Of a DNA stretch of 64,000 nt, positions 49,035-57,917 are shown piece by piece (position 1 is the first letter of the stretch; the number at the start of each line of letters is the position of its first letter). Location of the stretch: positions 160,704-224,703 of IMG/VR virus record IMGVR_UViG_3300036770_007495, one strand, 5' to 3'. The notes beneath the pieces were generated by a model. It was given only the letters and a program-made list of their open reading frames with translations, was not told where the DNA came from and did no database searches. The position numbers and the translations under genes are program-made.

Positions 49035-51974
49035 TCAACCAGCTGCAAACAAATTTGTGCGCAGGCATTTGAATACCTTGTCTGTAGCATTGCCCTGTAG
49101 AGAATGTGCTGTGAGTGAAACTGCCAATCCATTGGTAATGGTGCCATATTCTACCAACGGACCAGTGCTAGTAAACAAAATACCATATTCAGAAGATGCT
49201 GCTTCTGCACCATCACCAATTGTATTGATCTCACTGTAGTGCACTTTGTTGAGCACTGTGTCTCTCACTTCAATGATGTACTTGCATGAGTTGAAATCAG
49301 TTAGACTGTATGAATCAATGATGCCAAAATCAGCAATGGATGTCTTCTCAAAATTTGAAATGGGCTTTGGATTGATTTCAAGATAGTGAGACGCATTGCT
49401 GCCATCACCAGTTGCAAGCATGTAAATTCTGCCATTGGCTGTAAGATTGATGGTGCCGCTCTTTTTAACAATGCCATTGTACCATTCAGTGTTGATGAAA
49501 TTGGTCAGTGAAGTCTGTGCACTATCACGATTGATGTACAAAGTATCAACCAATTGATTGGTATTGCCGCCAGAGAAATAAATTGCACTGCTGGAACTCA
49601 CTGTGCCTGCAACAGTCAAATTGCCGCTGATGGCAACACTGCCAGTCACATCAAATCCAGACAATTCATACTGCTTGATGTCAATGTATGTGATGTTGGC
49701 AGATGTTGCTTCAAGCAAAGATGTTGTAAGCGTGCCCTGCACCGTAACATTGCCTGTTACAGTGCCGCCAGACAGAGGCAGATAATTGCCAGATGCATTG
49801 TTGTTAGCATTGATCCAAATGGCTGATGCAGAATTATAAACAAGTGTCTGTCCATCTTGTACATCGGTGATGCGAACATTGTGCAGCTCATCCAATTCAT
49901 AGCCATTGTCTATTTCAACATAAATTTTTCCATTGACTGTTGAATTGAGAGAAAATCCGACCTTGACAAGGTGATTTGGTGCCTGTGGTTTGATGTTTGT
50001 TATTGCACCCGCAGCAGTTGAGGAGAGATAAAGTGTGGTGCCTTCAGGATATGCTCTTGTATCAATGCCTTCAAGCTCACCCATGGTCATGATGTAGCCT
50101 TCTTGGTTGATTGCAGTTGATCCCATGGTTATACCAATGGTATCTGCTGATCTAAGATCAGAAGTAGCAAGTGCAGGCCACATTTTGCCTCTGTTGCCTT
50201 GCACACCTGATAGATAAACTACTGTGCCTTTGGGAATTTCACTGCCTGTTTTGTTGACACCAATGATCCACAACATTTTATTGATGGGATACTTGAGTAC
50301 AGGATCTCCATCCATGAATACCAAAGTACGCTCAGCACTATCATAGTATAAGCGCCCATCAACATGAACAGGTGCAACATCTCTGAGGGTGAATGTCAGC
50401 ATCTCAGCATTGAAAGCACTCATGGTGCTTACATTGACAGTGTTGCCAAATGGTGTTATACCCAAATCGCCAGATGATGTATTAAATGTAAGAGTTTGAT
50501 ACCCTCCTCCACCGCTAGAAAAAATGTCTGCTAGATCCACACCACCAGACAGAATCTGACCTGTTGCAACATTGAGCGTGCCGTTCATTGTGCCACCATC
50601 TGCATACTGAACAGCAACAGTGCCGCCTCCTGCATATGACTGAGCATAAATGGCAAACTTCTTATACAAGTCAGTCTGCAAATTGGCAACATGAGACTTG
50701 ACCTCATTTGACATTTCTGTCTTGATGGCTCCCAATGCATCTTTGAAAACATTGGCTTGAGATGCTCGAGCTTCAGAAATGATGCCTTCATCAGGAGCAT
50801 TGTCTTTGAGAGCATGAACTTGCTCTGCAAACACTTCTTCCACACATTCGCGAACTGATTTGATTTGCTTGGTTGCTATTTTGTCAGCAGCTTCTTCAAG
50901 CGTCTGTTGAGCATGATCTTTGAGCTGTTGTTTTAAGTCATCAACAGATTCTTTGATTTGATCAATTTGCTGTTTTGAAACATCTTGCAGCCATGTGGTT
51001 TGCTTGGCAAAAAATGCAGCAATGCCATCATCAAAATTTTTGACGTTTTCAGTTACAACATTCTCATTGAATTCTTTGAGCTGCTGTTCAACATGCAACT
51101 TGAGATTTTCATCTGCATCCTTGATGACTGCTTGCAGAGACTCTGACAGTTGCGTAATTTTGCTGGTGAGCTCACCCTGCAGTGCATTCTTTGCTTCAAC
51201 ATTTGCAGCAAATATTTTTTCAGACAAATGTGTGAAAGTGCTGTGCTCTTGTTCCTGCACAACAGTCTCAAATTGGTCTTCCAGACGCTTGCATGCTTTT
51301 CTGAGCACATCAATGGTATGCTTGTTGATTTTGATTTCTGCAGTCTGTTTCCACTGCTCAAACAAATCAGCAAACTTCTCTGCACCATCATTGATCTTCT
51401 GATTGATGATGTTTTCCGCTTTGTTTTGAATGCCAAGTGCAGAAGCTGCAATGCTTTGACGAGCATCATCAATGGATTCATCAATGCGTTCCAGCAATTG
51501 CTGCTCAACTTGCTGCAAAAACTCAACAATTTTGTTTTCTTTGTTGGCTTTGGATTCTTCCTGCAATGCAGTCCAATTGTGCTGATTTTCTAAATCAACA
51601 TCTTCAACAATTTCTTCTTGTTCAATGAGATCATCAACTTCTGCTGCCTGTTCGTGAAGCAGTGCTTCAGATTCAAATTCTATGGCAATGCCATGCAGCA
51701 GTGCGTGTTCATTGATGAACACTTGAGATGGTGCATTGGATTCTACAACAACCTTGAACTCAATGTCTTTGTAAATTTTGCTGCCATATTCTACATCAAC
51801 TTTGATGATGGGGCAACCATCTACGTATCTCTCTGCTGATTTGATGAAAGCTGCATTTTCATTGAGCGTAATGTTGAATACGTTGAAAAATGCTTCATCA
51901 ACCTGGCTGCATCGAATAATGTTCTCACCTGTTTTAGTGAGATTGAAATTGAATTGTTGGTTGTCCAGGCGCAT
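49035..51974 (-). CDS. Chimeric virion protein: long acidic coiled coil plus fibre-type C-terminal domains
   Basis: E/Q/K-rich heptads over about aa 110-480, then GGGTVAVQY, GYELDELHNVRIT, YLPLSGGTVTGNV and IIDSYSLTDFNSCKYIIEV motifs. Confidence 0.65.
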   Translation of the reverse strand: MRLDNQQFNFNLTKTGENIIRCSQVDEAFFNVFNITLNENAAFIKSAERYVDGCPIIKVDVEYGSKIYKDIEFKVVVESNAPSQVFINEHALLHGIAIEFESEALLHEQAAEVDDLIEQEEIVEDVDLENQHNWTALQEESKANKENKIVEFLQQVEQQLLERIDESIDDARQSIAASALGIQNKAENIINQKINDGAEKFADLFEQWKQTAEIKINKHTIDVLRKACKRLEDQFETVVQEQEHSTFTHLSEKIFAANVEAKNALQGELTSKITQLSESLQAVIKDADENLKLHVEQQLKEFNENVVTENVKNFDDGIAAFFAKQTTWLQDVSKQQIDQIKESVDDLKQQLKDHAQQTLEEAADKIATKQIKSVRECVEEVFAEQVHALKDNAPDEGIISEARASQANVFKDALGAIKTEMSNEVKSHVANLQTDLYKKFAIYAQSYAGGGTVAVQYADGGTMNGTLNVATGQILSGGVDLADIFSSGGGGYQTLTFNTSSGDLGITPFGNTVNVSTMSAFNAEMLTFTLRDVAPVHVDGRLYYDSAERTLVFMDGDPVLKYPINKMLWIIGVNKTGSEIPKGTVVYLSGVQGNRGKMWPALATSDLRSADTIGITMGSTAINQEGYIMTMGELEGIDTRAYPEGTTLYLSSTAAGAITNIKPQAPNHLVKVGFSLNSTVNGKIYVEIDNGYELDELHNVRITDVQDGQTLVYNSASAIWINANNNASGNYLPLSGGTVTGNVTVQGTLTTSLLEATSANITYIDIKQYELSGFDVTGSVAISGNLTVAGTVSSSSAIYFSGGNTNQLVDTLYINRDSAQTSLTNFINTEWYNGIVKKSGTINLTANGRIYMLATGDGSNASHYLEINPKPISNFEKTSIADFGIIDSYSLTDFNSCKYIIEVRDTVLNKVHYSEINTIGDGAEAASSEYGILFTSTGPLVEYGTITNGLAVSLTAHSLQGNATDKVFKCLRTNLFAAG

Positions 51975-52008
51975 ATCTCGTTGCCCGGATATTTATGCAT
52001 CATTTTCA

Positions 52009-52257
52009 CTATGTACAGGGCAAGATTTCAAATGAATCATCTGGATACCACCAGATGTTGTAATTCTTTTTGAAATTTTCCAATTGCTCTGCGGTTGGCT
52101 TCTTTTTGGTGATGCGCATGATGCGATCACATTGAGCCTGAGCTGTTAAAAATTTGTATGGATGAGCAGCCATTTCACCCCACCATGCAATGTCTTCATA
52201 TGCAACTTTGTATGCATGTGTCTGTACATGCTGAGTAGCCAAGTCTTCTTTATTCAT
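52009..52257 (-). CDS. Hypothetical protein, last gene of the rml operon
   Basis: 82 aa; ATGA overlap with rmlA. Confidence 0.6.
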   Translation of the reverse strand: MNKEDLATQHVQTHAYKVAYEDIAWWGEMAAHPYKFLTAQAQCDRIMRITKKKPTAEQLENFKKNYNIWWYPDDSFEILPCT

Positions 52258-52970
52258 TTGAGTTCAAATTTGCGATTGCTGCGCTGTTCAATGGCTCTGA
52301 TCATGTTGGCACAATCAAGCAAGTCGTCATGATTGCCTGCATCAAACCAGAATCCATCCAGCTTCTGAACATACACACCATTGATTTCATTGATCTTTTT
52401 GATGAGATCAACAATTTCAAGTTCTCCTCGTGCAGAAGGCTTCAGATGTTTGGCCCAATGACATGCAGAATTGTCAAACACATACAAGCCTACAACAGCA
52501 TCATTGCTTACAAATGATGTTGGCTTTTCCACAATTTGCTCAATGTAACCATTTTTGGTTTTGACTACACCATATCGCTCTGGATGAGTGACTTCAAATG
52601 TGAAGATGCTGTTGGGAGTTGCATTGATTTTGGCATTGTTGATGATGATGTTGTCTCCCAGCACCAATGCAACATCATCTCCTGCAATCCATTTTTCTGC
52701 AATGGTGAATGCTTGTGGTAATCCTGCAGGCTCTGGCTGCACTTCAAACGTCAAATCGACATCATTGATGTGCCTCAATGCTTGCTTGAACAATGATTGT
52801 TGTTCAGGAGTTGTGATGACCATGATGTCTGTGATGCCCATGTCACGCAATGTCATGATGGGGTAGTAAATCATGGGATTTTTATACACTGGCAGCAACT
52901 GTTTGCTAACAGCATGTGTCAATGGATACAGTCGAGTGCCTTTGCCTCCTGCAAGAACAATGCCTTTCAT
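52254..52970 (-). CDS. rmlA: Glucose-1-phosphate thymidylyltransferase
   Basis: MKGIVLAGGKGTRLYPLT..VSKQLLPVY, EKP, KPSARGELEI, WFDAG. Confidence 0.95.
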   Translation of the reverse strand: MKGIVLAGGKGTRLYPLTHAVSKQLLPVYKNPMIYYPIMTLRDMGITDIMVITTPEQQSLFKQALRHINDVDLTFEVQPEPAGLPQAFTIAEKWIAGDDVALVLGDNIIINNAKINATPNSIFTFEVTHPERYGVVKTKNGYIEQIVEKPTSFVSNDAVVGLYVFDNSACHWAKHLKPSARGELEIVDLIKKINEINGVYVQKLDGFWFDAGNHDDLLDCANMIRAIEQRSNRKFELK

Positions 52971-53968
52971 TTCAGAATATAATGCTCCAGAGTCTTGGCA
53001 ATGCCACTGGAAAAGTCAAATTGTGGTTTCCAATTGAAGCGCGTTTGCATTTTGGTGCTGTCAATTGCATAACGACGATCATGACCAGGGCGATCATCAA
53101 CAAACTTGATGAAGTCAGCATATGATTGCGTTGCATTGCCACGTGGCGCCATTTCATCCAATTGTTTGCAAATGGTGTTGACCAAATCAATGTTGCGAAT
53201 CTCATTGCTTGCACCAATGCAGAAATGTTCACCTGGCTGTGTATCACCCATGAGCACTTGCATCACACCTGCAGCATGATCCTGCACATAAATCCAATCT
53301 CTCACCTGCATGCCATCACCATACACTGGAATGTCTTTGTATTCTAATGCATTTTTGATGACCTTGGGAATCAACTTCTCAACATGCTGTCCTGGTCCAT
53401 AGTTGTTGGAGCAATGAGTGATGGCTGCATTGAGCTTGTAAGTGTTGCAATATGCTTCTACCAACATGTCAGCACTTGCTTTGGTTGCTGAATAAGGATT
53501 GCGTGGATTGTAACAAGTTTGTTCATTGAATGCAGGAGCATTGGGTTCTAAGTGCCCAAATACTTCGTCAGTAGATACTTGTACAAATTTGTTTTGACTG
53601 TTGGCTCCCCAAATGCTCTTGCAACATTCTAGTAGGCACATGGTGCCATTGACATTGGTTCTCAAAAACTCTGAATTGCTTTTGATGGAGTTATCAACAT
53701 GTGTCTCAGCAGCAAAATTTACAATGGCATCAATGTTGTGCTTTTCAATGATGTATTGCATGATGCTTCTGTCAGAGATGTCTGCTTTCATGAACACACC
53801 ATATGAGCATCCCAACACTTTATGCTCATATGCAGCTGCAGGTGCATTGGTAGCAGCATATGTGAGCTTGTCTACATTGATGATGTTTTTGATTCTGGGA
53901 TTTTGCATGGCTAGTTGAATAAACTGCCAGCCAATGAAACCGTATCCGCCTGTTACAAGTAAGTTCAT
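52967..53968 (-). CDS. rmlB: dTDP-glucose 4,6-dehydratase
   Basis: LVTGGYGFIG, DKLTYA, FAAETHVDNSI, VSTDEVFG, YSATKAS, CSNNYGP, RDWIYV, DRPGHDRRYAID. Confidence 0.96.
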   Translation of the reverse strand: MNLLVTGGYGFIGWQFIQLAMQNPRIKNIINVDKLTYAATNAPAAAYEHKVLGCSYGVFMKADISDRSIMQYIIEKHNIDAIVNFAAETHVDNSIKSNSEFLRTNVNGTMCLLECCKSIWGANSQNKFVQVSTDEVFGHLEPNAPAFNEQTCYNPRNPYSATKASADMLVEAYCNTYKLNAAITHCSNNYGPGQHVEKLIPKVIKNALEYKDIPVYGDGMQVRDWIYVQDHAAGVMQVLMGDTQPGEHFCIGASNEIRNIDLVNTICKQLDEMAPRGNATQSYADFIKFVDDRPGHDRRYAIDSTKMQTRFNWKPQFDFSSGIAKTLEHYILK

Positions 53969-54855
53969 TTGTTGTTGATGTTGAAAGAAAGTTGATCAAT
54001 TGCCATCATCATTGCATCTTCAATGGGTGTCATGTGCAATTTGTGTGCAATGGCTTTGGATGCATCAAGTACACAATTGGATCTTGGTGCAGCAACTGTT
54101 TTGTTGAATTCATCAATGCTCTTGAAATACAATTTGTCTTTGATGAGATTTTTTTCTTTGAGCATTGCAACAACTTGCTGAGTATTGAGATGTCCTGGCT
54201 GTGTCAAATTGAAAGGAGACATTTTGAATTTATAAGAGTTACTTGCAATGTACACAACATTGCGAGCAAATTCAGGCAAATAGGTGAAAGAGTTGGTGGC
54301 ATTCAACAACACATCATAGTTGATGATTTTCATCAAATAGTTTCTTGGTGATGGTGCATCATCAAATGGAATTCTCAATCTGCAAACAAAAGCTTCATCT
54401 TGTAGCAACTGTTCTGCAAGTGATTTGGATCTGCTGTACCAAGAGCTTGTTGTTGATGCAAATCCAAAATTATGCTCATCTTTTTCTGTAAATTTGTGTG
54501 ACGGCAATTCACCTCTCTCACAATTTGCATCATTGTAGATGCATCCTGAAGAAACATGAACAAAAACAATGTTGTGCTTCTTGCATACATTATGAATTGC
54601 AACAGGCAAAAACACATTGCCTTCCAACACAGGCTGCTTGTTGATTTCGCGCTCACAAACATCAACATTTGGTGCACCTACATAACCACCACAGTTGATG
54701 ACTGCATCAATGTTCTTGTTGATGAGCAGGCGCGTAAACTGCTGCTCATCCAAGGGAAATCTCACTGAAGCAGTGGCAAAAGGAATATGCTGTCTGCACA
54801 GTTCTTTTGCAATTGCCTCACCAACGTATCCCGTCGCTCCAAGTAATAAGATCAT
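53965..54855 (-). CDS. NDP-4-keto-6-deoxyglucose 3,5-epimerase/4-reductase (NRS/ER-type; RmlD-like SDR)
   Basis: GATGYVG; G.PNVDVCE; SSGCIY; WYSRSK; RLRIPF...PRNYLMKIINY...NSFTYLPE; APRSNCVLD. These follow plant NRS/ER motifs (GRPNVDWCE, TGCIF, FYSKTK, PRNFITKIARY, NSMTILDE, APRSNNELD). Confidence 0.8.
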   Translation of the reverse strand: MILLLGATGYVGEAIAKELCRQHIPFATASVRFPLDEQQFTRLLINKNIDAVINCGGYVGAPNVDVCEREINKQPVLEGNVFLPVAIHNVCKKHNIVFVHVSSGCIYNDANCERGELPSHKFTEKDEHNFGFASTTSSWYSRSKSLAEQLLQDEAFVCRLRIPFDDAPSPRNYLMKIINYDVLLNATNSFTYLPEFARNVVYIASNSYKFKMSPFNLTQPGHLNTQQVVAMLKEKNLIKDKLYFKSIDEFNKTVAAPRSNCVLDASKAIAHKLHMTPIEDAMMMAIDQLSFNINNK

Positions 54856-54946
54856 ATTTGTGAATGATTTTATTTACTACAATTAACAACGAAGTCAATG
54901 AACCAATGAACAATGCAAAGTAGAATAGAGCCTTGGAAATACTCAT
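54818..54946 (-). CDS. 42-aa single-transmembrane peptide
   Basis: MSISKALFYFALFIGSLTSLLIVVNKIIHKYDLITWSDGIRW; TAAATA-N5-ATG. It overlaps the next gene by 38 nt. Confidence 0.5.
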   Translation of the reverse strand: MSISKALFYFALFIGSLTSLLIVVNKIIHKYDLITWSDGIRW

Positions 54947-54950
54947 GAGG

Positions 54951-57617
54951 TTATTTATTTGTTGATGCAACAACTCTTTCGTACAAGCCAAAGAAACCAT
55001 GCTTTGGCTTTGGTTTGTAGTGATCAAACAATGCTTGTTGCTGATGTTGTTGTAGCTCAGCAAAAGAAGATGTATTGCGAAGCGTATTTCCATCCAGATA
55101 ATACATCAATCCAGATCCATTGATGGCCACCGGAGTGCCATTCAAATCACCTTTGATCAAGGTTCTCCCACCCAATTTGAATCCTTTGTTGCGCATTTCT
55201 GCTTGTGCATTGGCAATATCACGCTCACCAAAATTTATAAACAACAATTGCGGCTTAAATCCTGCATTGATGAGCATTGCAATGTTTGGCAACATTTGCT
55301 GAAAATCAGCTGAATCGTAACCATTGCCTCTCAGAGAAATCATTTTTTGAATGTTGTCCATGGATGCAGGCACCATGAGTGATCTACCAAATGAATTTCG
55401 CAATAAATCATTGTTGCCAAATGCAAGTTCAGGACGATTGGCAATCAATTCATTGTTGGATTGTGCCTTGAGATCAGCAAAAAATCCGCGGCGCTTGTCA
55501 GCAATGACATACTTTTGACTCAGTTTGATTTTGGCAATTTTGGGATACATTCTGCCAAAATCAGATGATGGATCAATGATGGCCATGAGCTGTGCAAAGT
55601 GTGGTGCAACTTTGTTGATGAATTTTTTGTTGCGATTTACATATGCAGAAATTTCATCATTGTTCATGATGGCATTGGCAGCTCTAGTGACTACACTTGA
55701 TGGCTTGCGGGTGATGCTGTTGTCAATTGCAGTGACTATTTTTTTGATGCTTGTTTCTCGTGGCAAGTTTAATTTTGCAGCAATATCAAACAACCCTGTG
55801 ATGGTATTTGCATTTACTTCACCGCGCACATCTGCTGTGAGTCTGTTGGTGATGCTTTGTGCATACAAGTCAAATAGTTTTTGCTTGTTTTCGGGTGTTG
55901 AATTTTCAATGTATGTAGCAAAGCTGTCTAGTACTTGTGGTGAGCTAGCAATGATTCCTTTTGGATCTTTCCAGTTGAATGCACCACCCATGCTCATGTA
56001 ATAGCTGAATGAATCATTGATTGCTTCTACTGCAGCTTTGTACTCATCAAATCGTCTATCAGACTTGTTGATGGTACCCATCAAAGCTTTGACGCCAATT
56101 GCAACTCCCTGAAGCACATCAACGTTGATTGTTGCATCAAAATACAAGCGCTCTTCTTCCACAAGCTTTGCTATTTGAGAAGCAATTTTTTTGCCAAGTT
56201 CAGGTCTGTATGCATAAACCACAGGCAAAGATTCACTAATGAATTTGATGAGCTTATTGAAGCCTTGTGCATCATTATCAAGCAAATCCGTATCTTGTGG
56301 GAATGATTGCTTGAATGAATCAATCAAAGATGGAATGTATTGTGCAGCATATTTTTCATAGCTAAAATCAGTACCCACAAGACTTGATTCATGCATGCTC
56401 ACTAGTGATTTGAACAATGGCGCAAAAGATGCAATTTTTTTGCCTGGATAGTAGTTGCGCAATGACATCAAACCAATGCCAACTTGTGCCTGATAATCTG
56501 CTTCGTTGATCATTTTGTTGGTTTTGATGCCACACAACTTTGTAGCAAATGTAATGTTTGATGGAACCTGCACATCAGTTAACTTTGAAACTGATTCAAG
56601 ATCTGGCATTCTCACCAAAAATCTGACATAATCATCATACCGATAATGACCTGTTGGCCACTTAACACCATAATTATAAAATGCAGAACTGCCACTGGCA
56701 ATGCGGTCAAATGATACTTTAAACGCATTGGCAATGATGGGTTCATCATTGCTATGATTCAAAAAGAAATCCAAAATAGCTTCATAAGAAGCTGGTGACA
56801 TGGTGTATACAGAGTTGGAGTGATTGAATCTATTCTTAATTTCTGCTGCACTGTAACCATGTGAAGGTTTGGGTACAATGGCATAGTCCATGAACCCATA
56901 CACATCAACTGCAACCCAGCATGGATAGTAGTTGGGCATGAGAGGCAAGCACCAATAACCACTGCATCTTTCTGATCTACCGCTGGTAAAAAAGTCAGGA
57001 TCCTTTTTTGGATCTCTGTTGCCCATCAAAATTTTTGCTGCATCTGCTGAATCAACTCTAAAAAATTTATACATTGAGTTGGCATACACCTCATCAACAT
57101 TGTTTTCTTGAAAAGCAGCAAGAGTTTTTTGCAAATTTGGGTGAGTAGCTTGTTCAAAGTCATATCTGCGGGTGATGTATGCATCCATTGCAGCAATGAG
57201 ACCAGGCAGTGGTTCTCCTTGTCTGTCCTTGACATTTTCATCAGGATAAAAGACTTTGAAGCTCATCAAGTCTTTGCTAACTTCAGGATTGTTGCGTGCA
57301 GTCTGTACGCGATATACATTCAATGCTTCACGTGCTGCTGGCGCCTGATCTGGCGTAACATTGCCAGAATACAAATTGGCCATGATGAAATCCAAATAGC
57401 GGGAATCACCATTGAGTGCACCTGTTTGCGCATTTGTTGTTACATTGTATGTTGGATCAAATGATTTAGCAATGTTGTCAATGAAAGTTTCCTTGGGTAA
57501 TGTTGCTGCACCACCAAAAATGCCATGAGTATAATTATTATACAATTCTAAAAATTTCGGATCTTTGAGAATTTTGTTTCTTTTGGATGCGTAATCTTCT
57601 AATAACAAGTGAACCAT
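54951..57617 (-). CDS. Large late protein (888 aa), candidate internal virion protein
   Basis: TAAATA-N5-ATG; N-terminus MVHLLLE; no family recognised. Confidence 0.65.
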   Translation of the reverse strand: MVHLLLEDYASKRNKILKDPKFLELYNNYTHGIFGGAATLPKETFIDNIAKSFDPTYNVTTNAQTGALNGDSRYLDFIMANLYSGNVTPDQAPAAREALNVYRVQTARNNPEVSKDLMSFKVFYPDENVKDRQGEPLPGLIAAMDAYITRRYDFEQATHPNLQKTLAAFQENNVDEVYANSMYKFFRVDSADAAKILMGNRDPKKDPDFFTSGRSERCSGYWCLPLMPNYYPCWVAVDVYGFMDYAIVPKPSHGYSAAEIKNRFNHSNSVYTMSPASYEAILDFFLNHSNDEPIIANAFKVSFDRIASGSSAFYNYGVKWPTGHYRYDDYVRFLVRMPDLESVSKLTDVQVPSNITFATKLCGIKTNKMINEADYQAQVGIGLMSLRNYYPGKKIASFAPLFKSLVSMHESSLVGTDFSYEKYAAQYIPSLIDSFKQSFPQDTDLLDNDAQGFNKLIKFISESLPVVYAYRPELGKKIASQIAKLVEEERLYFDATINVDVLQGVAIGVKALMGTINKSDRRFDEYKAAVEAINDSFSYYMSMGGAFNWKDPKGIIASSPQVLDSFATYIENSTPENKQKLFDLYAQSITNRLTADVRGEVNANTITGLFDIAAKLNLPRETSIKKIVTAIDNSITRKPSSVVTRAANAIMNNDEISAYVNRNKKFINKVAPHFAQLMAIIDPSSDFGRMYPKIAKIKLSQKYVIADKRRGFFADLKAQSNNELIANRPELAFGNNDLLRNSFGRSLMVPASMDNIQKMISLRGNGYDSADFQQMLPNIAMLINAGFKPQLLFINFGERDIANAQAEMRNKGFKLGGRTLIKGDLNGTPVAINGSGLMYYLDGNTLRNTSSFAELQQHQQQALFDHYKPKPKHGFFGLYERVVASTNK

Positions 57618-57668
57618 GCATGTATTTATGCATGGTTCTTGAGAGATCCTGCGGATTAAGCAGCAAAA

Positions 57669-57917
57669 CTACTTGTTTTGAATCTTGATGAGGTGTTCTA
57701 CGAGATCTGCAACTCCATCCTTTTCAAGAATCACCTGATCACCATATGGAGAACCTTCAAACAGAATTCTCCAGCACCAGCGCAATCTTTGCCGCAATGT
57801 TGCTTTGTGTGTATTTTGCATTTCCCAAATGGAAAACTCTGTTTGTTCAAGTTCATCATCATAAGCAACGCGAAGAATTTCGCTGCTGCATGCGCATTTG
57901 AAGTATTGTTCTTTCAT
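57669..57917 (-). CDS. Hypothetical protein
   Basis: 82 aa; ATGA overlap with the YopX gene. Confidence 0.65.
   Translation of the reverse strand: MKEQYFKCACSSEILRVAYDDELEQTEFSIWEMQNTHKATLRQRLRWCWRILFEGSPYGDQVILEKDGVADLVEHLIKIQNK

What the first reader, a model, noticed from the sequence alone, without database searches (positions are those of the whole stretch)
52009..54957. Complete, late-promoter-linked three-gene L-rhamnose operon using an NRS/ER-type bifunctional epimerase-reductase instead of RmlC+RmlD
Seen: ATGA-coupled NRS/ER-like gene, rmlB, rmlA and an 82-aa ORF; no rmlC in the window; TAAATA motifs at 54952-54957 and 54871-54876 upstream; the operon adjoins the tail-fibre block. 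Known: the third enzyme's motifs (PNVDxCE, GCIY, PRNYxxKI, APRSNxxLD) match plant NRS/ER, which performs both 3,5-epimerisation and 4-reduction; Mimivirus also uses a bifunctional epimerase-reductase for rhamnose. Inference: the phage makes its own NDP-rhamnose late in infection. That timing fits decorating virions or the host envelope better than modifying replicating DNA.
Basis: partly seen in the sequence, partly recalled or inferred. Interest (0 to 1): 0.75.

Follow-up and report, generated by a model that had tools for sequence, protein, structure and literature searches.

The report
Phage rhamnose operon without RmlC
A 225-kb freshwater jumbo phage carries a compact, probably late-expressed gene cassette that should make activated L-rhamnose with three enzymes instead of four, and this likely feeds the phage's many sugar-transferring enzymes. 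The layout is real and undescribed for phages, but it is common in uncultured viruses and in Planctomycetota and Verrucomicrobiota.

Summary
On the minus strand, four ATGA-coupled genes encode:
- a 296-aa SDR (54855-53965);
- RmlB (53968-52967);
- a short 238-aa RmlA (52970-52254);
- a conserved 82-aa orphan (52257-52009).

The SDR is NRS/ER (UGER)-type, not RmlD:
- Its only significant PDB sequence hits are Arabidopsis NRS/ER and Mimivirus L780.
- A pLDDT-97.6 model matches those two best (TM 0.81-0.90). RmlDs match at 0.64-0.80.
- The Ser/Tyr/Lys and Cys/Lys positions are conserved.
- The complete 224.7-kb genome has no RmlC.

TAAATA is the phage's dominant upstream motif. It precedes tail genes, and a T4 gp55 homologue is present, so late expression is plausible. 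The distal copy actually serves a conserved 42-codon upstream ORF. The proximal copy has atypical spacing.

The "plant-like" framing needs correction. The same NRS/ER-RmlB-RmlA operon without RmlC occurs in at least 596 bacterial species, mostly Planctomycetota and Verrucomicrobiota. NRS/ER-type genes occur on at least 593 IMG/VR contigs.

Elsewhere the phage encodes about seven glycosyltransferase-like proteins, methyltransferases, a sulfotransferase-like protein and UDP-galactopyranose mutase. It has no hydroxymethylase and no priming transferase. Virion or other protein glycosylation is therefore the best guess for the target, but it is untested.

Verdict: new variant of a known kind, moderate interest.

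The parts
54952..54957 (-). TAAATA late-promoter-like motif number 1. It overlaps the stop codon of the 888-aa gene and lies at the canonical 11-nt distance from the ATG at 54946.
   Evidence: Of the genome's motif copies, 56 lie 11-16 nt before an ORF start. A T4 gp55 homologue is present in the genome.
54818..54946 (-). 42-codon ORF for a hydrophobic, membrane-like peptide. It overlaps the start of the next gene by 38 nt. It is the probable first cistron of the cassette.
   Evidence: Read from the sequence. The same small ORF, with TAAATA 14 nt upstream, is called in relatives L005 and L006, which are 53% identical at the enzyme level. It is absent in L001/L002 and L003/L004.
54871..54876 (-). 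TAAATA motif number 2, inside the 42-codon ORF and 21 nt before the ATG of the epimerase-reductase gene (atypical spacing, G at the preceding position).
   Evidence: It is conserved at the same distance in L005/L006. In L003/L004 a TAAATA lies 12 nt before the homologous gene. L001/L002 have none.
53965..54855 (-). NRS/ER (UGER)-type bifunctional NDP-4-keto-6-deoxyglucose 3,5-epimerase/4-reductase, 296 aa.
   Evidence: PDB phmmer: 4qqr E=2e-27, 7jid E=6e-17, no RmlD. TIGR01214 38 bits against a cut-off of 224. AF2 model pLDDT 97.6. Foldseek: L780 TM 0.87-0.90, NRS/ER 0.79-0.87 across its two chains, RmlDs 0.64-0.80. G104, Y140, K144 and K176 are invariant and C105 nearly invariant in 78 homologues; S103 is invariant in the 14-sequence alignment A3.
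52967..53968 (-). [quoted passage not shown]
   Evidence: TIGR01181 385.9 bits, above the cut-off of 365.1. PF16363 252 bits. 43% identical to Salmonella RffG over the full length.
52254..52970 (-). Short RmlA-type glucose-1-phosphate nucleotidylyltransferase, 238 aa. It lacks the last ~43 residues found in bacterial RmlA.
   Evidence: PF00483 176 bits. TIGR01207 225 bits, below the cut-off of 360. 48% identical to E. coli RfbA residues 5-250 of 293. The 238-aa length is conserved in the relatives read; one relative has 241 aa.
52009..52257 (-). Conserved 82-aa orphan protein, the fourth cistron of the cassette. Function unknown.
   Evidence: Present directly after RmlA in L001, L003/4, L005/6, L095, L096 and L098 at 33-68% identity, with 11 invariant residues. 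No Pfam, NCBIfam or PHROG hit. AF2 pLDDT 83.7 with no fold match. Not found by tblastn in the 80 bacterial loci.
54951..57617 (-). Upstream 888-aa protein of unknown function with a canonical CATAAATA 11 nt before its ATG. It is a context gene that may be co-transcribed with the cassette.
   Evidence: It is the conserved neighbour in L001 and L005. No family or fold lead.
49035..51974 (-). Downstream 979-aa fibre-like protein (context).
   Evidence: Only weak leads, to BppL_N, lambda Stf and T4 gp9/10-like clusters. CATAAATA lies 21 nt upstream. No convincing terminator lies between it and the cassette.

Best explanation
The cassette is a phage-borne, RmlC-less pathway for an activated 6-deoxy-L-hexose, most likely dTDP-beta-L-rhamnose.

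The proposed steps are:
1. The short RmlA activates glucose-1-phosphate with dTTP, or possibly UTP.
2. RmlB dehydrates the product to NDP-4-keto-6-deoxy-D-glucose.
3. A single NRS/ER (UGER)-type SDR performs both the 3,5-epimerisation and the NADPH-dependent 4-reduction. Canonical bacteria split this between RmlC and RmlD. By alignment, Cys105/Lys176 would serve epimerisation and Ser103/Tyr140/Lys144 reduction.

The genes are translationally coupled. They sit in a 25-gene minus-strand block of tail and fibre genes behind T4-type late-promoter motifs, so they are probably made late.

The sugar most likely feeds the phage's own glycosyltransferases, encoded in two clusters elsewhere in the genome together with methyltransferases, a sulfotransferase-like protein and UDP-galactopyranose mutase. 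These would build a glycan on a cytoplasmic acceptor, most plausibly virion proteins.

Shown here: gene content, family assignment, conserved catalytic positions, absence of RmlC, promoter-motif statistics, and conservation of the cassette. Inferred: nucleotide specificity, product stereochemistry, timing and acceptor.
For: Enzyme identity.

Not RmlD. In the tree E. coli RfbD sits on a terminal branch of 10 substitutions per site.

No RmlC in the complete genome.

Same solution elsewhere without RmlC:
- 0 of 80 bacterial loci and 0 of 80 viral loci have an RfbC-like gene nearby, while RmlA and/or RmlB flank most of them.
- Five Planctomycetota and Verrucomicrobiota genomes have no PF00908 at all.

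Selection: the four-gene cassette is kept in relatives down to ~45-50% identity and in a different neighbourhood.

Late expression:
- TAAATA enrichment and its position before sheath, tape-measure, baseplate and fibre genes.
- A gp55 homologue at E=5e-9.
- Sigma-70-like sites occur only at chance level, and no convincing terminator lies in the cassette.

Consumers of the sugar: GT2 x2, GT17-like, GT10-like, GT1/4, DUF5672, DUF3431+methyltransferase, CmcI-like methyltransferases, a sulfotransferase-like protein and Glf.

Cytoplasmic, non-DNA acceptor:
- No priming phosphoglycosyl transferase, PF02397 or PF00953.
- No thymidylate-synthase-family hydroxymethylase.
- No T4 alpha-glucosyltransferase homologue.
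Against: - No enzyme assay exists, and the protein is only 22-27% identical to the characterised NRS/ER and L780. A different 4-reduction stereochemistry (for example 6-deoxy-L-talose) or another product cannot be excluded.
- RmlA scores below the NCBIfam equivalog cut-off because it is truncated.
- The promoter motif next to the enzyme gene has atypical spacing (21 nt), and one close relative (L001/L002) has no motif in the gap.
- No rhamnosyltransferase can be named among the glycosyltransferases, and they lie 55-105 kb from the cassette.
- Glycosyltransferase cluster 1 has no TAAATA before its first gene.
- The host is unknown.
- The only RNA evidence is patchy metatranscriptome contigs from a 95-98% identical relative, which could be DNA carry-over.
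- The assignment of Cys/Lys as epimerisation residues comes from my own knowledge of the 4QQR and 7JID papers. I could not retrieve them here.
Confidence: 0.65

Rival explanations
1. The pathway is as described, but the sugar is used to remodel the host envelope (LPS, capsule or S-layer glycan). This could block superinfection, keep the envelope intact, or top up a host rhamnose pool. It would not decorate virions.
For: RmlA and RmlB alone are common phage auxiliary genes (290 GenBank phage records; PMC6969025). The cassette could simply supply precursor to host transferases. A 42-codon membrane-like peptide heads the cassette.
Against: The phage has no priming phosphoglycosyl transferase. It encodes about seven cytoplasmic-type glycosyltransferases of its own. 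The cassette sits in a late structural block in every context seen. Late synthesis leaves little time for export to matter.
Confidence: 0.2
2. The 296-aa enzyme is only a reductase or a partial epimerase that depends on a host RmlC, or it yields another 6-deoxyhexose such as 6-deoxy-L-talose. In that case the operon would not be a self-sufficient rhamnose pathway.
For: Identity to the characterised NRS/ER and L780 is only 22-27%. Product stereochemistry cannot be read from sequence. A related giant-virus enzyme, Mg535, keeps only the 3-epimerase plus reductase activities (PMC9614988).
Against: The Cys and Lys positions that distinguish NRS/ER from RmlD are conserved across the family. The structural match to L780 and NRS/ER is clearly better than to any RmlD. 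Five bacterial genomes that carry this enzyme have no RmlC at all.
Confidence: 0.12
3. The sugar nucleotide is the donor for glycosylation of the phage's DNA, as with T-even glucosylation and other phage DNA glycans.
For: The phage is a distant T4 relative. Phage glycosyltransferases are known to put diverse glycans on DNA (Pyle et al. 2024, cited in PMC12619734).
Against: The complete genome has no thymidylate-synthase-family dCMP/dUMP hydroxymethylase and no T4 alpha-glucosyltransferase homologue. The cassette sits behind late motifs in the tail and fibre block rather than with replication genes.
Confidence: 0.06

Closest known systems
[quoted passage not shown]
   Same: Best sequence match in the PDB (E=2e-27). 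TM 0.85-0.87 with rmsd 2.1-2.2 A to the AlphaFold models. Same PNVDxCE, GCI[YF], PRN[YF]xxKI and APRSN motifs. One SDR domain proposed to do both 3,5-epimerisation and 4-reduction.
   Different: Only ~26% identical. The plant enzymes work after a UDP-glucose dehydratase in a UDP pathway without RmlA. The phage enzyme is coupled to RmlB and RmlA. It is not derived from plants: its clade is viral and sits next to Planctomycetota and Verrucomicrobiota sequences.
Mimivirus L780 UDP-L-rhamnose synthase (UGER, PDB 7JID) with R141
   Same: Best structural match (TM 0.87-0.90, rmsd 2.3-2.5 A). It is a virus-encoded bifunctional epimerase-reductase that supplies rhamnose for virion (fibril) glycans. 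It accepts both UDP- and dTDP-linked substrate (PMC9614988).
   Different: 22-23% identity. It belongs to a eukaryotic giant virus, has no RmlA partner and is not in an operon. The phage version is ATGA-coupled with RmlB and RmlA in a tailed phage.
Canonical bacterial and phage RmlABCD pathway
   Same: RmlA and RmlB are ordinary members, 48% and 43% identical to enterobacterial enzymes. The expected end product is the same.
   Different: RmlC is absent and RmlD is replaced. Cyanophages that carry RmlB have a canonical RmlC beside it. The phage RmlA lacks the C-terminal ~43 residues.
NRS/ER-RmlB-RmlA operons of Planctomycetota and Verrucomicrobiota (unnamed; four Verrucomicrobia homologues noted by Yin et al. 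2011, PMC3220709)
   Same: Same three enzymes, commonly in the same order, with no RmlC in the locus or genome. 37-45% identity to the phage enzyme.
   Different: The bacterial RmlA is full length. There is no 82-aa ORF and no TAAATA motif. The bacterial sequences form an assemblage separate from the viral ones, although the deep split has SH-aLRT of only 87-94.
Virus-encoded glycosylation machineries (chloroviruses, Mimiviridae; mycobacteriophage virion glycosylation; glycosyltransferase-rich moraphages)
   Same: The genome combines sugar-nucleotide synthesis with many glycosyltransferases and sugar-modifying enzymes. It resembles moraphages in being a jumbo aquatic phage with several glycosyltransferase groups (PMC12619734).
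   Different: No glycan has been observed here. Membership of the moraphage lineage was not tested. That paper does not mention rhamnose, epimerases or dehydratases.

Membership tests
NRS/ER (UGER) bifunctional 3,5-epimerase/4-reductase | Sequence closer to characterised NRS/ER and L780 than to RmlD | tested here: met
   PDB phmmer: 4qqr 99.7 bits, 7jid 65.4 bits, no RmlD chain at E<=1.
NRS/ER (UGER) bifunctional 3,5-epimerase/4-reductase | Fold closest to the NRS/ER and L780 structures | tested here: met
   Model pLDDT 97.6. 7jid TM 0.87-0.90; 4qqr 0.79-0.87 across its two chains; RHM C-terminal domains 0.85-0.87. Best RmlD TM 0.76-0.80 at rmsd 3.4-3.7 A.
NRS/ER (UGER) bifunctional 3,5-epimerase/4-reductase | SDR reductase triad Ser/Thr-Tyr-Lys and the GxxGxxG cofactor motif | tested here: met
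   GATGYVG at residues 6-12. S103, Y140 and K144 align with T113, Y144 and K148 of 4qqr. Y140 and K144 are invariant in 78 homologues.
NRS/ER (UGER) bifunctional 3,5-epimerase/4-reductase | Cys and Lys proposed as acid/base for epimerisation (C115/K183 in Arabidopsis; assignment from my own knowledge, not retrieved here) | tested here: met
   C105 and K176 align with the GCI and PRNxxxK motifs of 4qqr and 7jid. K176 is invariant and C105 is conserved in at least 90% of 78 homologues.
NRS/ER (UGER) bifunctional 3,5-epimerase/4-reductase | Works without a separate RmlC | tested here: met
   No PF00908 in the complete phage genome, in 160 related loci, or in 5 bacterial genomes that carry the enzyme. 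This is genomic evidence only.
NRS/ER (UGER) bifunctional 3,5-epimerase/4-reductase | Catalytic conversion of NDP-4-keto-6-deoxy-D-glucose to NDP-L-rhamnose | not testable with these tools
   Needs an enzyme assay.
Canonical RmlD (TIGR01214) | Score above the curated equivalog cut-off | tested here: not met
   38.4 bits against 224.05. No true alignment to E. coli RfbD.
[quoted passage not shown] | Score above the curated equivalog cut-off, over the full length | tested here: met
   385.9 bits against 365.1, residues 3-331. 43% identical to Salmonella RffG, including the STDEV and YSATK motifs.
RmlA glucose-1-phosphate thymidylyltransferase (TIGR01207) | Score above the curated equivalog cut-off | tested here: not met
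   225.4 bits against 360.65. The match covers profile positions 1-245 of 286 because the C-terminal ~43 residues are missing.
RmlA glucose-1-phosphate thymidylyltransferase (TIGR01207) | Nucleotidyltransferase catalytic core (GGxGTRL, KQLLP, VQPxPxGLxQAF, LGDN) | tested here: met
   PF00483 176 bits. 48% identity to E. coli RfbA with these motifs aligned. Whether it prefers dTTP or UTP was not tested.
T4-type late promoter | TATAAATA-like element upstream of the gene | tested here: inconclusive
   The TAAATA core is present twice. The distal copy has the genome's canonical 11-nt spacing, but to the 42-codon ORF. The proximal copy is GTAAATA at 21 nt. One relative lacks it.
T4-type late promoter | A phage-encoded gp55-type late sigma factor, and the motif placed before structural genes | tested here: met
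   gp55 homologue at E=5.3e-9, 39% identity. The motif precedes sheath, tape-measure, baseplate-wedge, collar-fibre and fibre genes.
T4-type late promoter | Late transcription start mapped at the motif | not testable with these tools
   Only undirected metatranscriptome contigs of a relative were available.
Autonomous viral glycosylation machinery | The virus encodes both sugar-nucleotide synthesis and several glycosyltransferases | tested here: met
   The rhamnose cassette, Glf and two further SDRs, plus GT2 x2, GT17-like, GT10-like, GT1/4, DUF5672 and DUF3431.
Autonomous viral glycosylation machinery | A glycan is present on virion proteins | not testable with these tools
   Needs purified virions; the host is unknown.

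The most novel reading that the evidence does not exclude
This lineage of freshwater jumbo myophages, and perhaps the whole large viral clade of NRS/ER-type genes, runs a self-contained glycosylation system like that of giant viruses. It would make its own rhamnose by a three-enzyme route, galactofuranose and other sugars. With its seven or so transferases, methyltransferases and a sulfotransferase it would assemble a complex modified glycan on tail fibres or the capsid late in infection. The conserved 82-aa orphan would be a new accessory factor of the pathway.
Probability: 0.3. Interest if true: 0.75.

Novelty: new variant of a known kind. Interest (0 to 1): 0.5.

Why it matters
Rhamnose synthesis is usually described as a four-enzyme dTDP route in prokaryotes and their phages, and a UDP route with a bifunctional enzyme in eukaryotes and giant viruses. 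A genome survey states this explicitly (bioRxiv 10.1101/854612).

This cassette, its hundreds of viral relatives and the matching bacterial operons show a third, hybrid route: RmlA + RmlB + NRS/ER-type enzyme. It is common in nature but unannotated. Databases call the enzyme an "SDR family oxidoreductase" or mislabel it as RmlD.

There are three consequences:
- It bears on the origin of the eukaryotic enzyme. Yin et al. 2011 knew of only four bacterial homologues.
- It offers a compact three-gene module for making dTDP- or UDP-rhamnose.
- Together with the phage's large set of glycosyltransferases, it makes virion glycosylation in environmental jumbo phages a concrete, testable hypothesis.

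Tried and rejected
- **GenBank phages:** megablast of the region and tblastn of the enzyme against 50,697 records gave no match.
- **Viral-contig scans:** the single-protein pattern scan found nothing. The 78-sequence alignment was too diverse for pattern scanning. A 14-sequence alignment worked.
- **The 82-aa ORF as the detached C-terminus of the truncated RmlA:** rejected. hhalign against 50 full-length RmlAs gave probability 0.13, and no NCBIfam hit was found.
- **Function of the 82-aa ORF:** nothing from the Atlas features or structure search, Foldseek PDB (best E 0.96) or AFDB clusters (best E 0.28).
- **The 888-aa neighbour:** no family or fold lead.
- **Promoters and terminators:** sigma-70 promoter and intrinsic terminator scans were at chance level.
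- **Literature on NRS/ER and L780 catalytic residues:** PMC7586890 is not held. A term search and the survey text gave nothing usable.
- **Salmonella contig H6:** it turned out to be the ECA cluster without RmlD, so E. coli K-12 rfbD was used instead.
- **Whole-operon capture from Planctomycetota or Verrucomicrobiota:** considered but not claimed. The gene order matches, but the phage RmlA and RmlB are no closer to those bacteria (37-50% identity) than to enterobacteria (43-48%).

Full report
**What is there**

The window is the last 64 kb of a complete 224,703-bp IMG/VR virus record (CheckV 100%). On the minus strand, four ORFs overlap by ATGA:
- 54855-53965 (296 aa)
- 53968-52967 (333 aa)
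- 52970-52254 (238 aa)
- 52257-52009 (82 aa)

Family assignments:
- The 333-aa protein is a dTDP-glucose 4,6-dehydratase. It scores 386 bits on TIGR01181 against a cut-off of 365.
- The 238-aa protein is an RmlA-type nucleotidyltransferase (PF00483, 176 bits). It scores 225 bits on TIGR01207, below the cut-off of 360.
- The 296-aa protein is an extended SDR with only weak RmlD similarity (TIGR01214, 38 bits against 224).
- The 82-aa protein matches nothing.

RmlA is 48% identical to E. coli RfbA but stops at residue ~250 of 293. RmlB is 43% identical to Salmonella RffG over its whole length.

**The third enzyme**

Against all PDB sequences the only significant hits are two:
- Arabidopsis NRS/ER (4qqr, E=2e-27)
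- Mimivirus L780 UDP-L-rhamnose synthase (7jid, E=6e-17)

No RmlD structure reaches E<=1, although many are in the PDB. BLASTP against E. coli RfbD gives no true alignment.

The alignment with 4qqr and 7jid places query S103, C105, Y140, K144 and K176 on Arabidopsis T113, C115, Y144, K148 and K183. Across 78 homologues Y140, K144 and K176 are invariant and C105 nearly so. The roles of these residues (reduction triad; Cys/Lys for epimerisation) come from my own knowledge of the structural papers. I could not retrieve them.

An AlphaFold2 model built on the 78-sequence alignment is very confident (pLDDT 97.6, pTM 0.94). Foldseek ranks its matches as follows:

| Match | TM | rmsd (A) | Sequence identity |
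|---|---|---|---|
| L780 | 0.87-0.90 | 2.3-2.5 | 22-23% |
| NRS/ER (two chains) | 0.79-0.87 | 2.5-3.0 | 24-26% |
| RHM1-3 C-terminal domains | 0.85-0.87 | 2.1-2.2 | 26-27% |
| Canonical RmlDs | 0.64-0.80 | 3.4-5.5 | 12-20% |

**No RmlC**

PF00908 finds nothing in the complete genome at E<=10, while the control search detects it in 11 of 14 reference genomes.

**Relatives and origin**

Metagenomic homologues are numerous: 3,119 at E<=1e-5 and 1,400 cluster representatives at 50% identity.

Contigs carrying the closest ones keep the same four-gene cassette:
- L001 and L005 have the same neighbours as the window (YopX genes, an ~885-aa protein, large downstream proteins).
- L003/L004 have different neighbours (tail tube, sheath, a TnsA-like gene and a GH19-like gene upstream).

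The 82-aa ORF is conserved at 33-68% identity with 11 invariant residues.

The scan of one genome per prokaryotic species found at least 596 species with a relative. The best 80 are almost all Planctomycetota, Verrucomicrobiota or Kiritimatiellia, at 37-45% identity. Within those 80 loci:
- RmlB lies beside the gene in 53 loci and full-length RmlA in 56-57, often in the order NRS/ER, RmlB, RmlA.
- None has an RfbC-like gene.

Five of these genomes, among them a complete Novipirellula chromosome and Chthoniobacter flavus, have no PF00908 at all. Only one has a canonical RmlD.

IMG/VR holds at least 593 contigs with a relative. In the 80 kept, 55 have RmlA and/or RmlB within 5 kb and none has RmlC. 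Three of five sampled records encode a homologous contractile sheath, so they are tailed phages.

Trees:
- In the first tree the window's clade is monophyletic (SH-aLRT 100) on a long stem among Planctomycetota and Verrucomicrobiota sequences. E. coli RfbD is extremely distant.
- With the viral sequences added, 94 rows form a mostly viral assemblage (SH-aLRT 94), apart from a 43-row bacterial one.
- Both are quick trees without eukaryotic references, so deep branches are provisional.

Literature:
- Yin et al. 2011 knew four Verrucomicrobia homologues of plant NRS/ER and speculated that a prokaryotic donor had already merged the two activities (PMC3220709).
- A later survey reports this enzyme type only in eukaryotes and Mimivirus, and the rml pathway in bacteria, archaea and phages (bioRxiv 10.1101/854612).
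- I found no paper describing the enzyme in a bacteriophage. No GenBank phage record matches it.

**Promoter**

In a greedy ORF call of the whole genome (303 ORFs), TAAATA is the most enriched upstream hexamer: 67 ORFs against 6.6 expected. The extended consensus is (C)ATAAATA.

The genome holds only 132 copies on both strands. Fifty-six of them lie with the T 11-16 nt before an ATG, thirty at exactly 11.

Genes carrying the motif include the sheath, tape measure, baseplate wedge, collar fibre and fibre genes. The sheath is distantly T4-like, and the genome encodes a T4 gp55 homologue (E=5e-9). The motif is therefore very probably a T4-type late promoter.

At the cassette:
- The copy at 54957-54952 sits exactly 11 nt before an ATG at 54946. 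That ATG opens a 42-codon hydrophobic ORF overlapping the enzyme gene's start. The ORF and a motif 14 nt before it recur in L005/L006.
- The copy at 54876-54871 lies inside that ORF, 21 nt before the enzyme's ATG. It is also conserved in L005/L006.
- L003/L004 have the motif 12 nt before the enzyme gene.
- L001/L002 have none and would depend on read-through from the upstream gene, whose window counterpart carries a canonical motif.

Sigma-70-like sites and terminators occur at chance level.

A freshwater metatranscriptome contains contigs 95-98% identical to part of the enzyme gene and most of the 888-aa gene. This is weak evidence, because DNA carry-over cannot be excluded.

**What the sugar is for**

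Outside the window the genome has two glycan clusters.

Genome 109,202-117,504, minus strand:
- two SDR epimerase/dehydratase proteins
- a GT17-like protein
- two Methyltransf_24/CmcI-like methyltransferases
- DUF5672
- a GT10-like protein
- a GT2/GT7C protein
- a GT2 protein
- two proteins with no family match

Genome 152,116-156,072, plus strand:
- a GT1/4 protein
- a sulfotransferase-like protein
- a DUF3431+methyltransferase protein
- UDP-galactopyranose mutase (280 bits)

The genome has no priming phosphoglycosyl transferase, no thymidylate-synthase-family hydroxymethylase and no T4 alpha-glucosyltransferase homologue. This argues for a cytoplasmic, non-DNA acceptor. By analogy with giant viruses and mycobacteriophages, virion proteins are the most plausible one (PMC9614988; Freeman et al. 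2023, cited in PMC12619734). That step is inference only. The moraphage paper reports several glycosyltransferase groups as core genes of aquatic jumbo phages but no rhamnose genes. Whether this phage belongs to that lineage was not tested.

**Verdict**

The corrections are these:
- The cassette has extra conserved cistrons.
- The promoter geometry is more complicated than described.
- The enzyme's kin are viral and Planctomycetota/Verrucomicrobiota sequences rather than plant ones.
- The arrangement is widespread, not unique.

It is a new variant of known rhamnose pathways, of moderate interest. The interest rises if the phage's glycosylation toolkit is shown to decorate virions.

Noticed in passing
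Whole genome; window examples include the genes starting at 57617, 49003, 47115 (minus strand) and 20263, 27696, 29618 (plus strand): TAAATA sits at a fixed distance from start codons. The T is 11 nt before the ATG in 30 genes, 12 in 14 genes and 13 in 7. If the geometry is that of T4 late promoters (element at -13 to -6, my own knowledge), transcripts would start at or next to the A of the ATG. About 50 late genes would then be translated from leaderless mRNAs.
   Followed up: partly
Whole genome (303 called ORFs): Shine-Dalgarno-like tetramers occur upstream of 28 of 303 ORFs (9.2%), the same as the genomic background (8.5%). The phage does not rely on SD pairing. This hints at a host such as Bacteroidota, which would conflict with the Planctomycetota/Verrucomicrobiota affinity of the enzyme.
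   Followed up: partly
Outside the window: genome 109,202-117,504 (L009:1202-9504, minus) and 152,116-156,072 (L010:10116-14072, plus): Two glycan-building clusters with about seven glycosyltransferase-like proteins, three methyltransferase domains, a sulfotransferase-like protein, two further sugar SDRs and UDP-galactopyranose mutase.
   Followed up: partly
L013-L092 (bacterial loci), e.g. L092:6001-8680 in Chthoniobacter flavus: NRS/ER-type, RmlB and RmlA form an RmlC-less operon in at least 596 bacterial species. The best 80 matches are nearly all Planctomycetota or Verrucomicrobiota. Five genomes checked have no RmlC at all. These proteins are annotated as generic SDRs or as RmlD.
   Followed up: yes
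L095-L174 (IMG/VR loci): At least 593 viral contigs carry an NRS/ER-type gene, usually next to RmlA and/or RmlB and never RmlC. In the tree they form a mostly virus-only assemblage, distinct from the bacterial one.
   Followed up: partly
window 54818-54946 (minus): A conserved 42-codon ORF for a hydrophobic peptide lies between the 888-aa gene and the cassette. It overlaps the enzyme gene's start by 38 nt and is served by the canonical-spacing TAAATA.
   Followed up: partly
window 52254-52970 (minus) and homologues in L001, L003, L005, L095: The phage RmlA is 238 aa in the window and in L001, L003, L005 and L095 (L098 has 241 aa). It lacks the C-terminal ~43 residues that bacterial RmlA keeps. 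This could alter oligomerisation or feedback control. The adjacent 82-aa ORF is not the missing piece.
   Followed up: partly
Outside the window: genome 128,941-129,174 (L094): A homologue of the T4 late sigma factor gp55 (E=5e-9, 39% identity over residues 42-119) lies in a 169-aa ORF.
   Followed up: no
window 51800-57700: Near-identical or related DNA is present in freshwater, lake, lagoon, aquaculture, soil and subsurface metagenomes. One freshwater metatranscriptome holds contigs over 54128-54639 and 55262-57700.
   Followed up: partly
Genome ends: IMG/VR labels the record as having direct terminal repeats. The first and last 20 to 5,000 bases of the genome as supplied are not identical. 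The repeat has presumably been trimmed.
   Followed up: no
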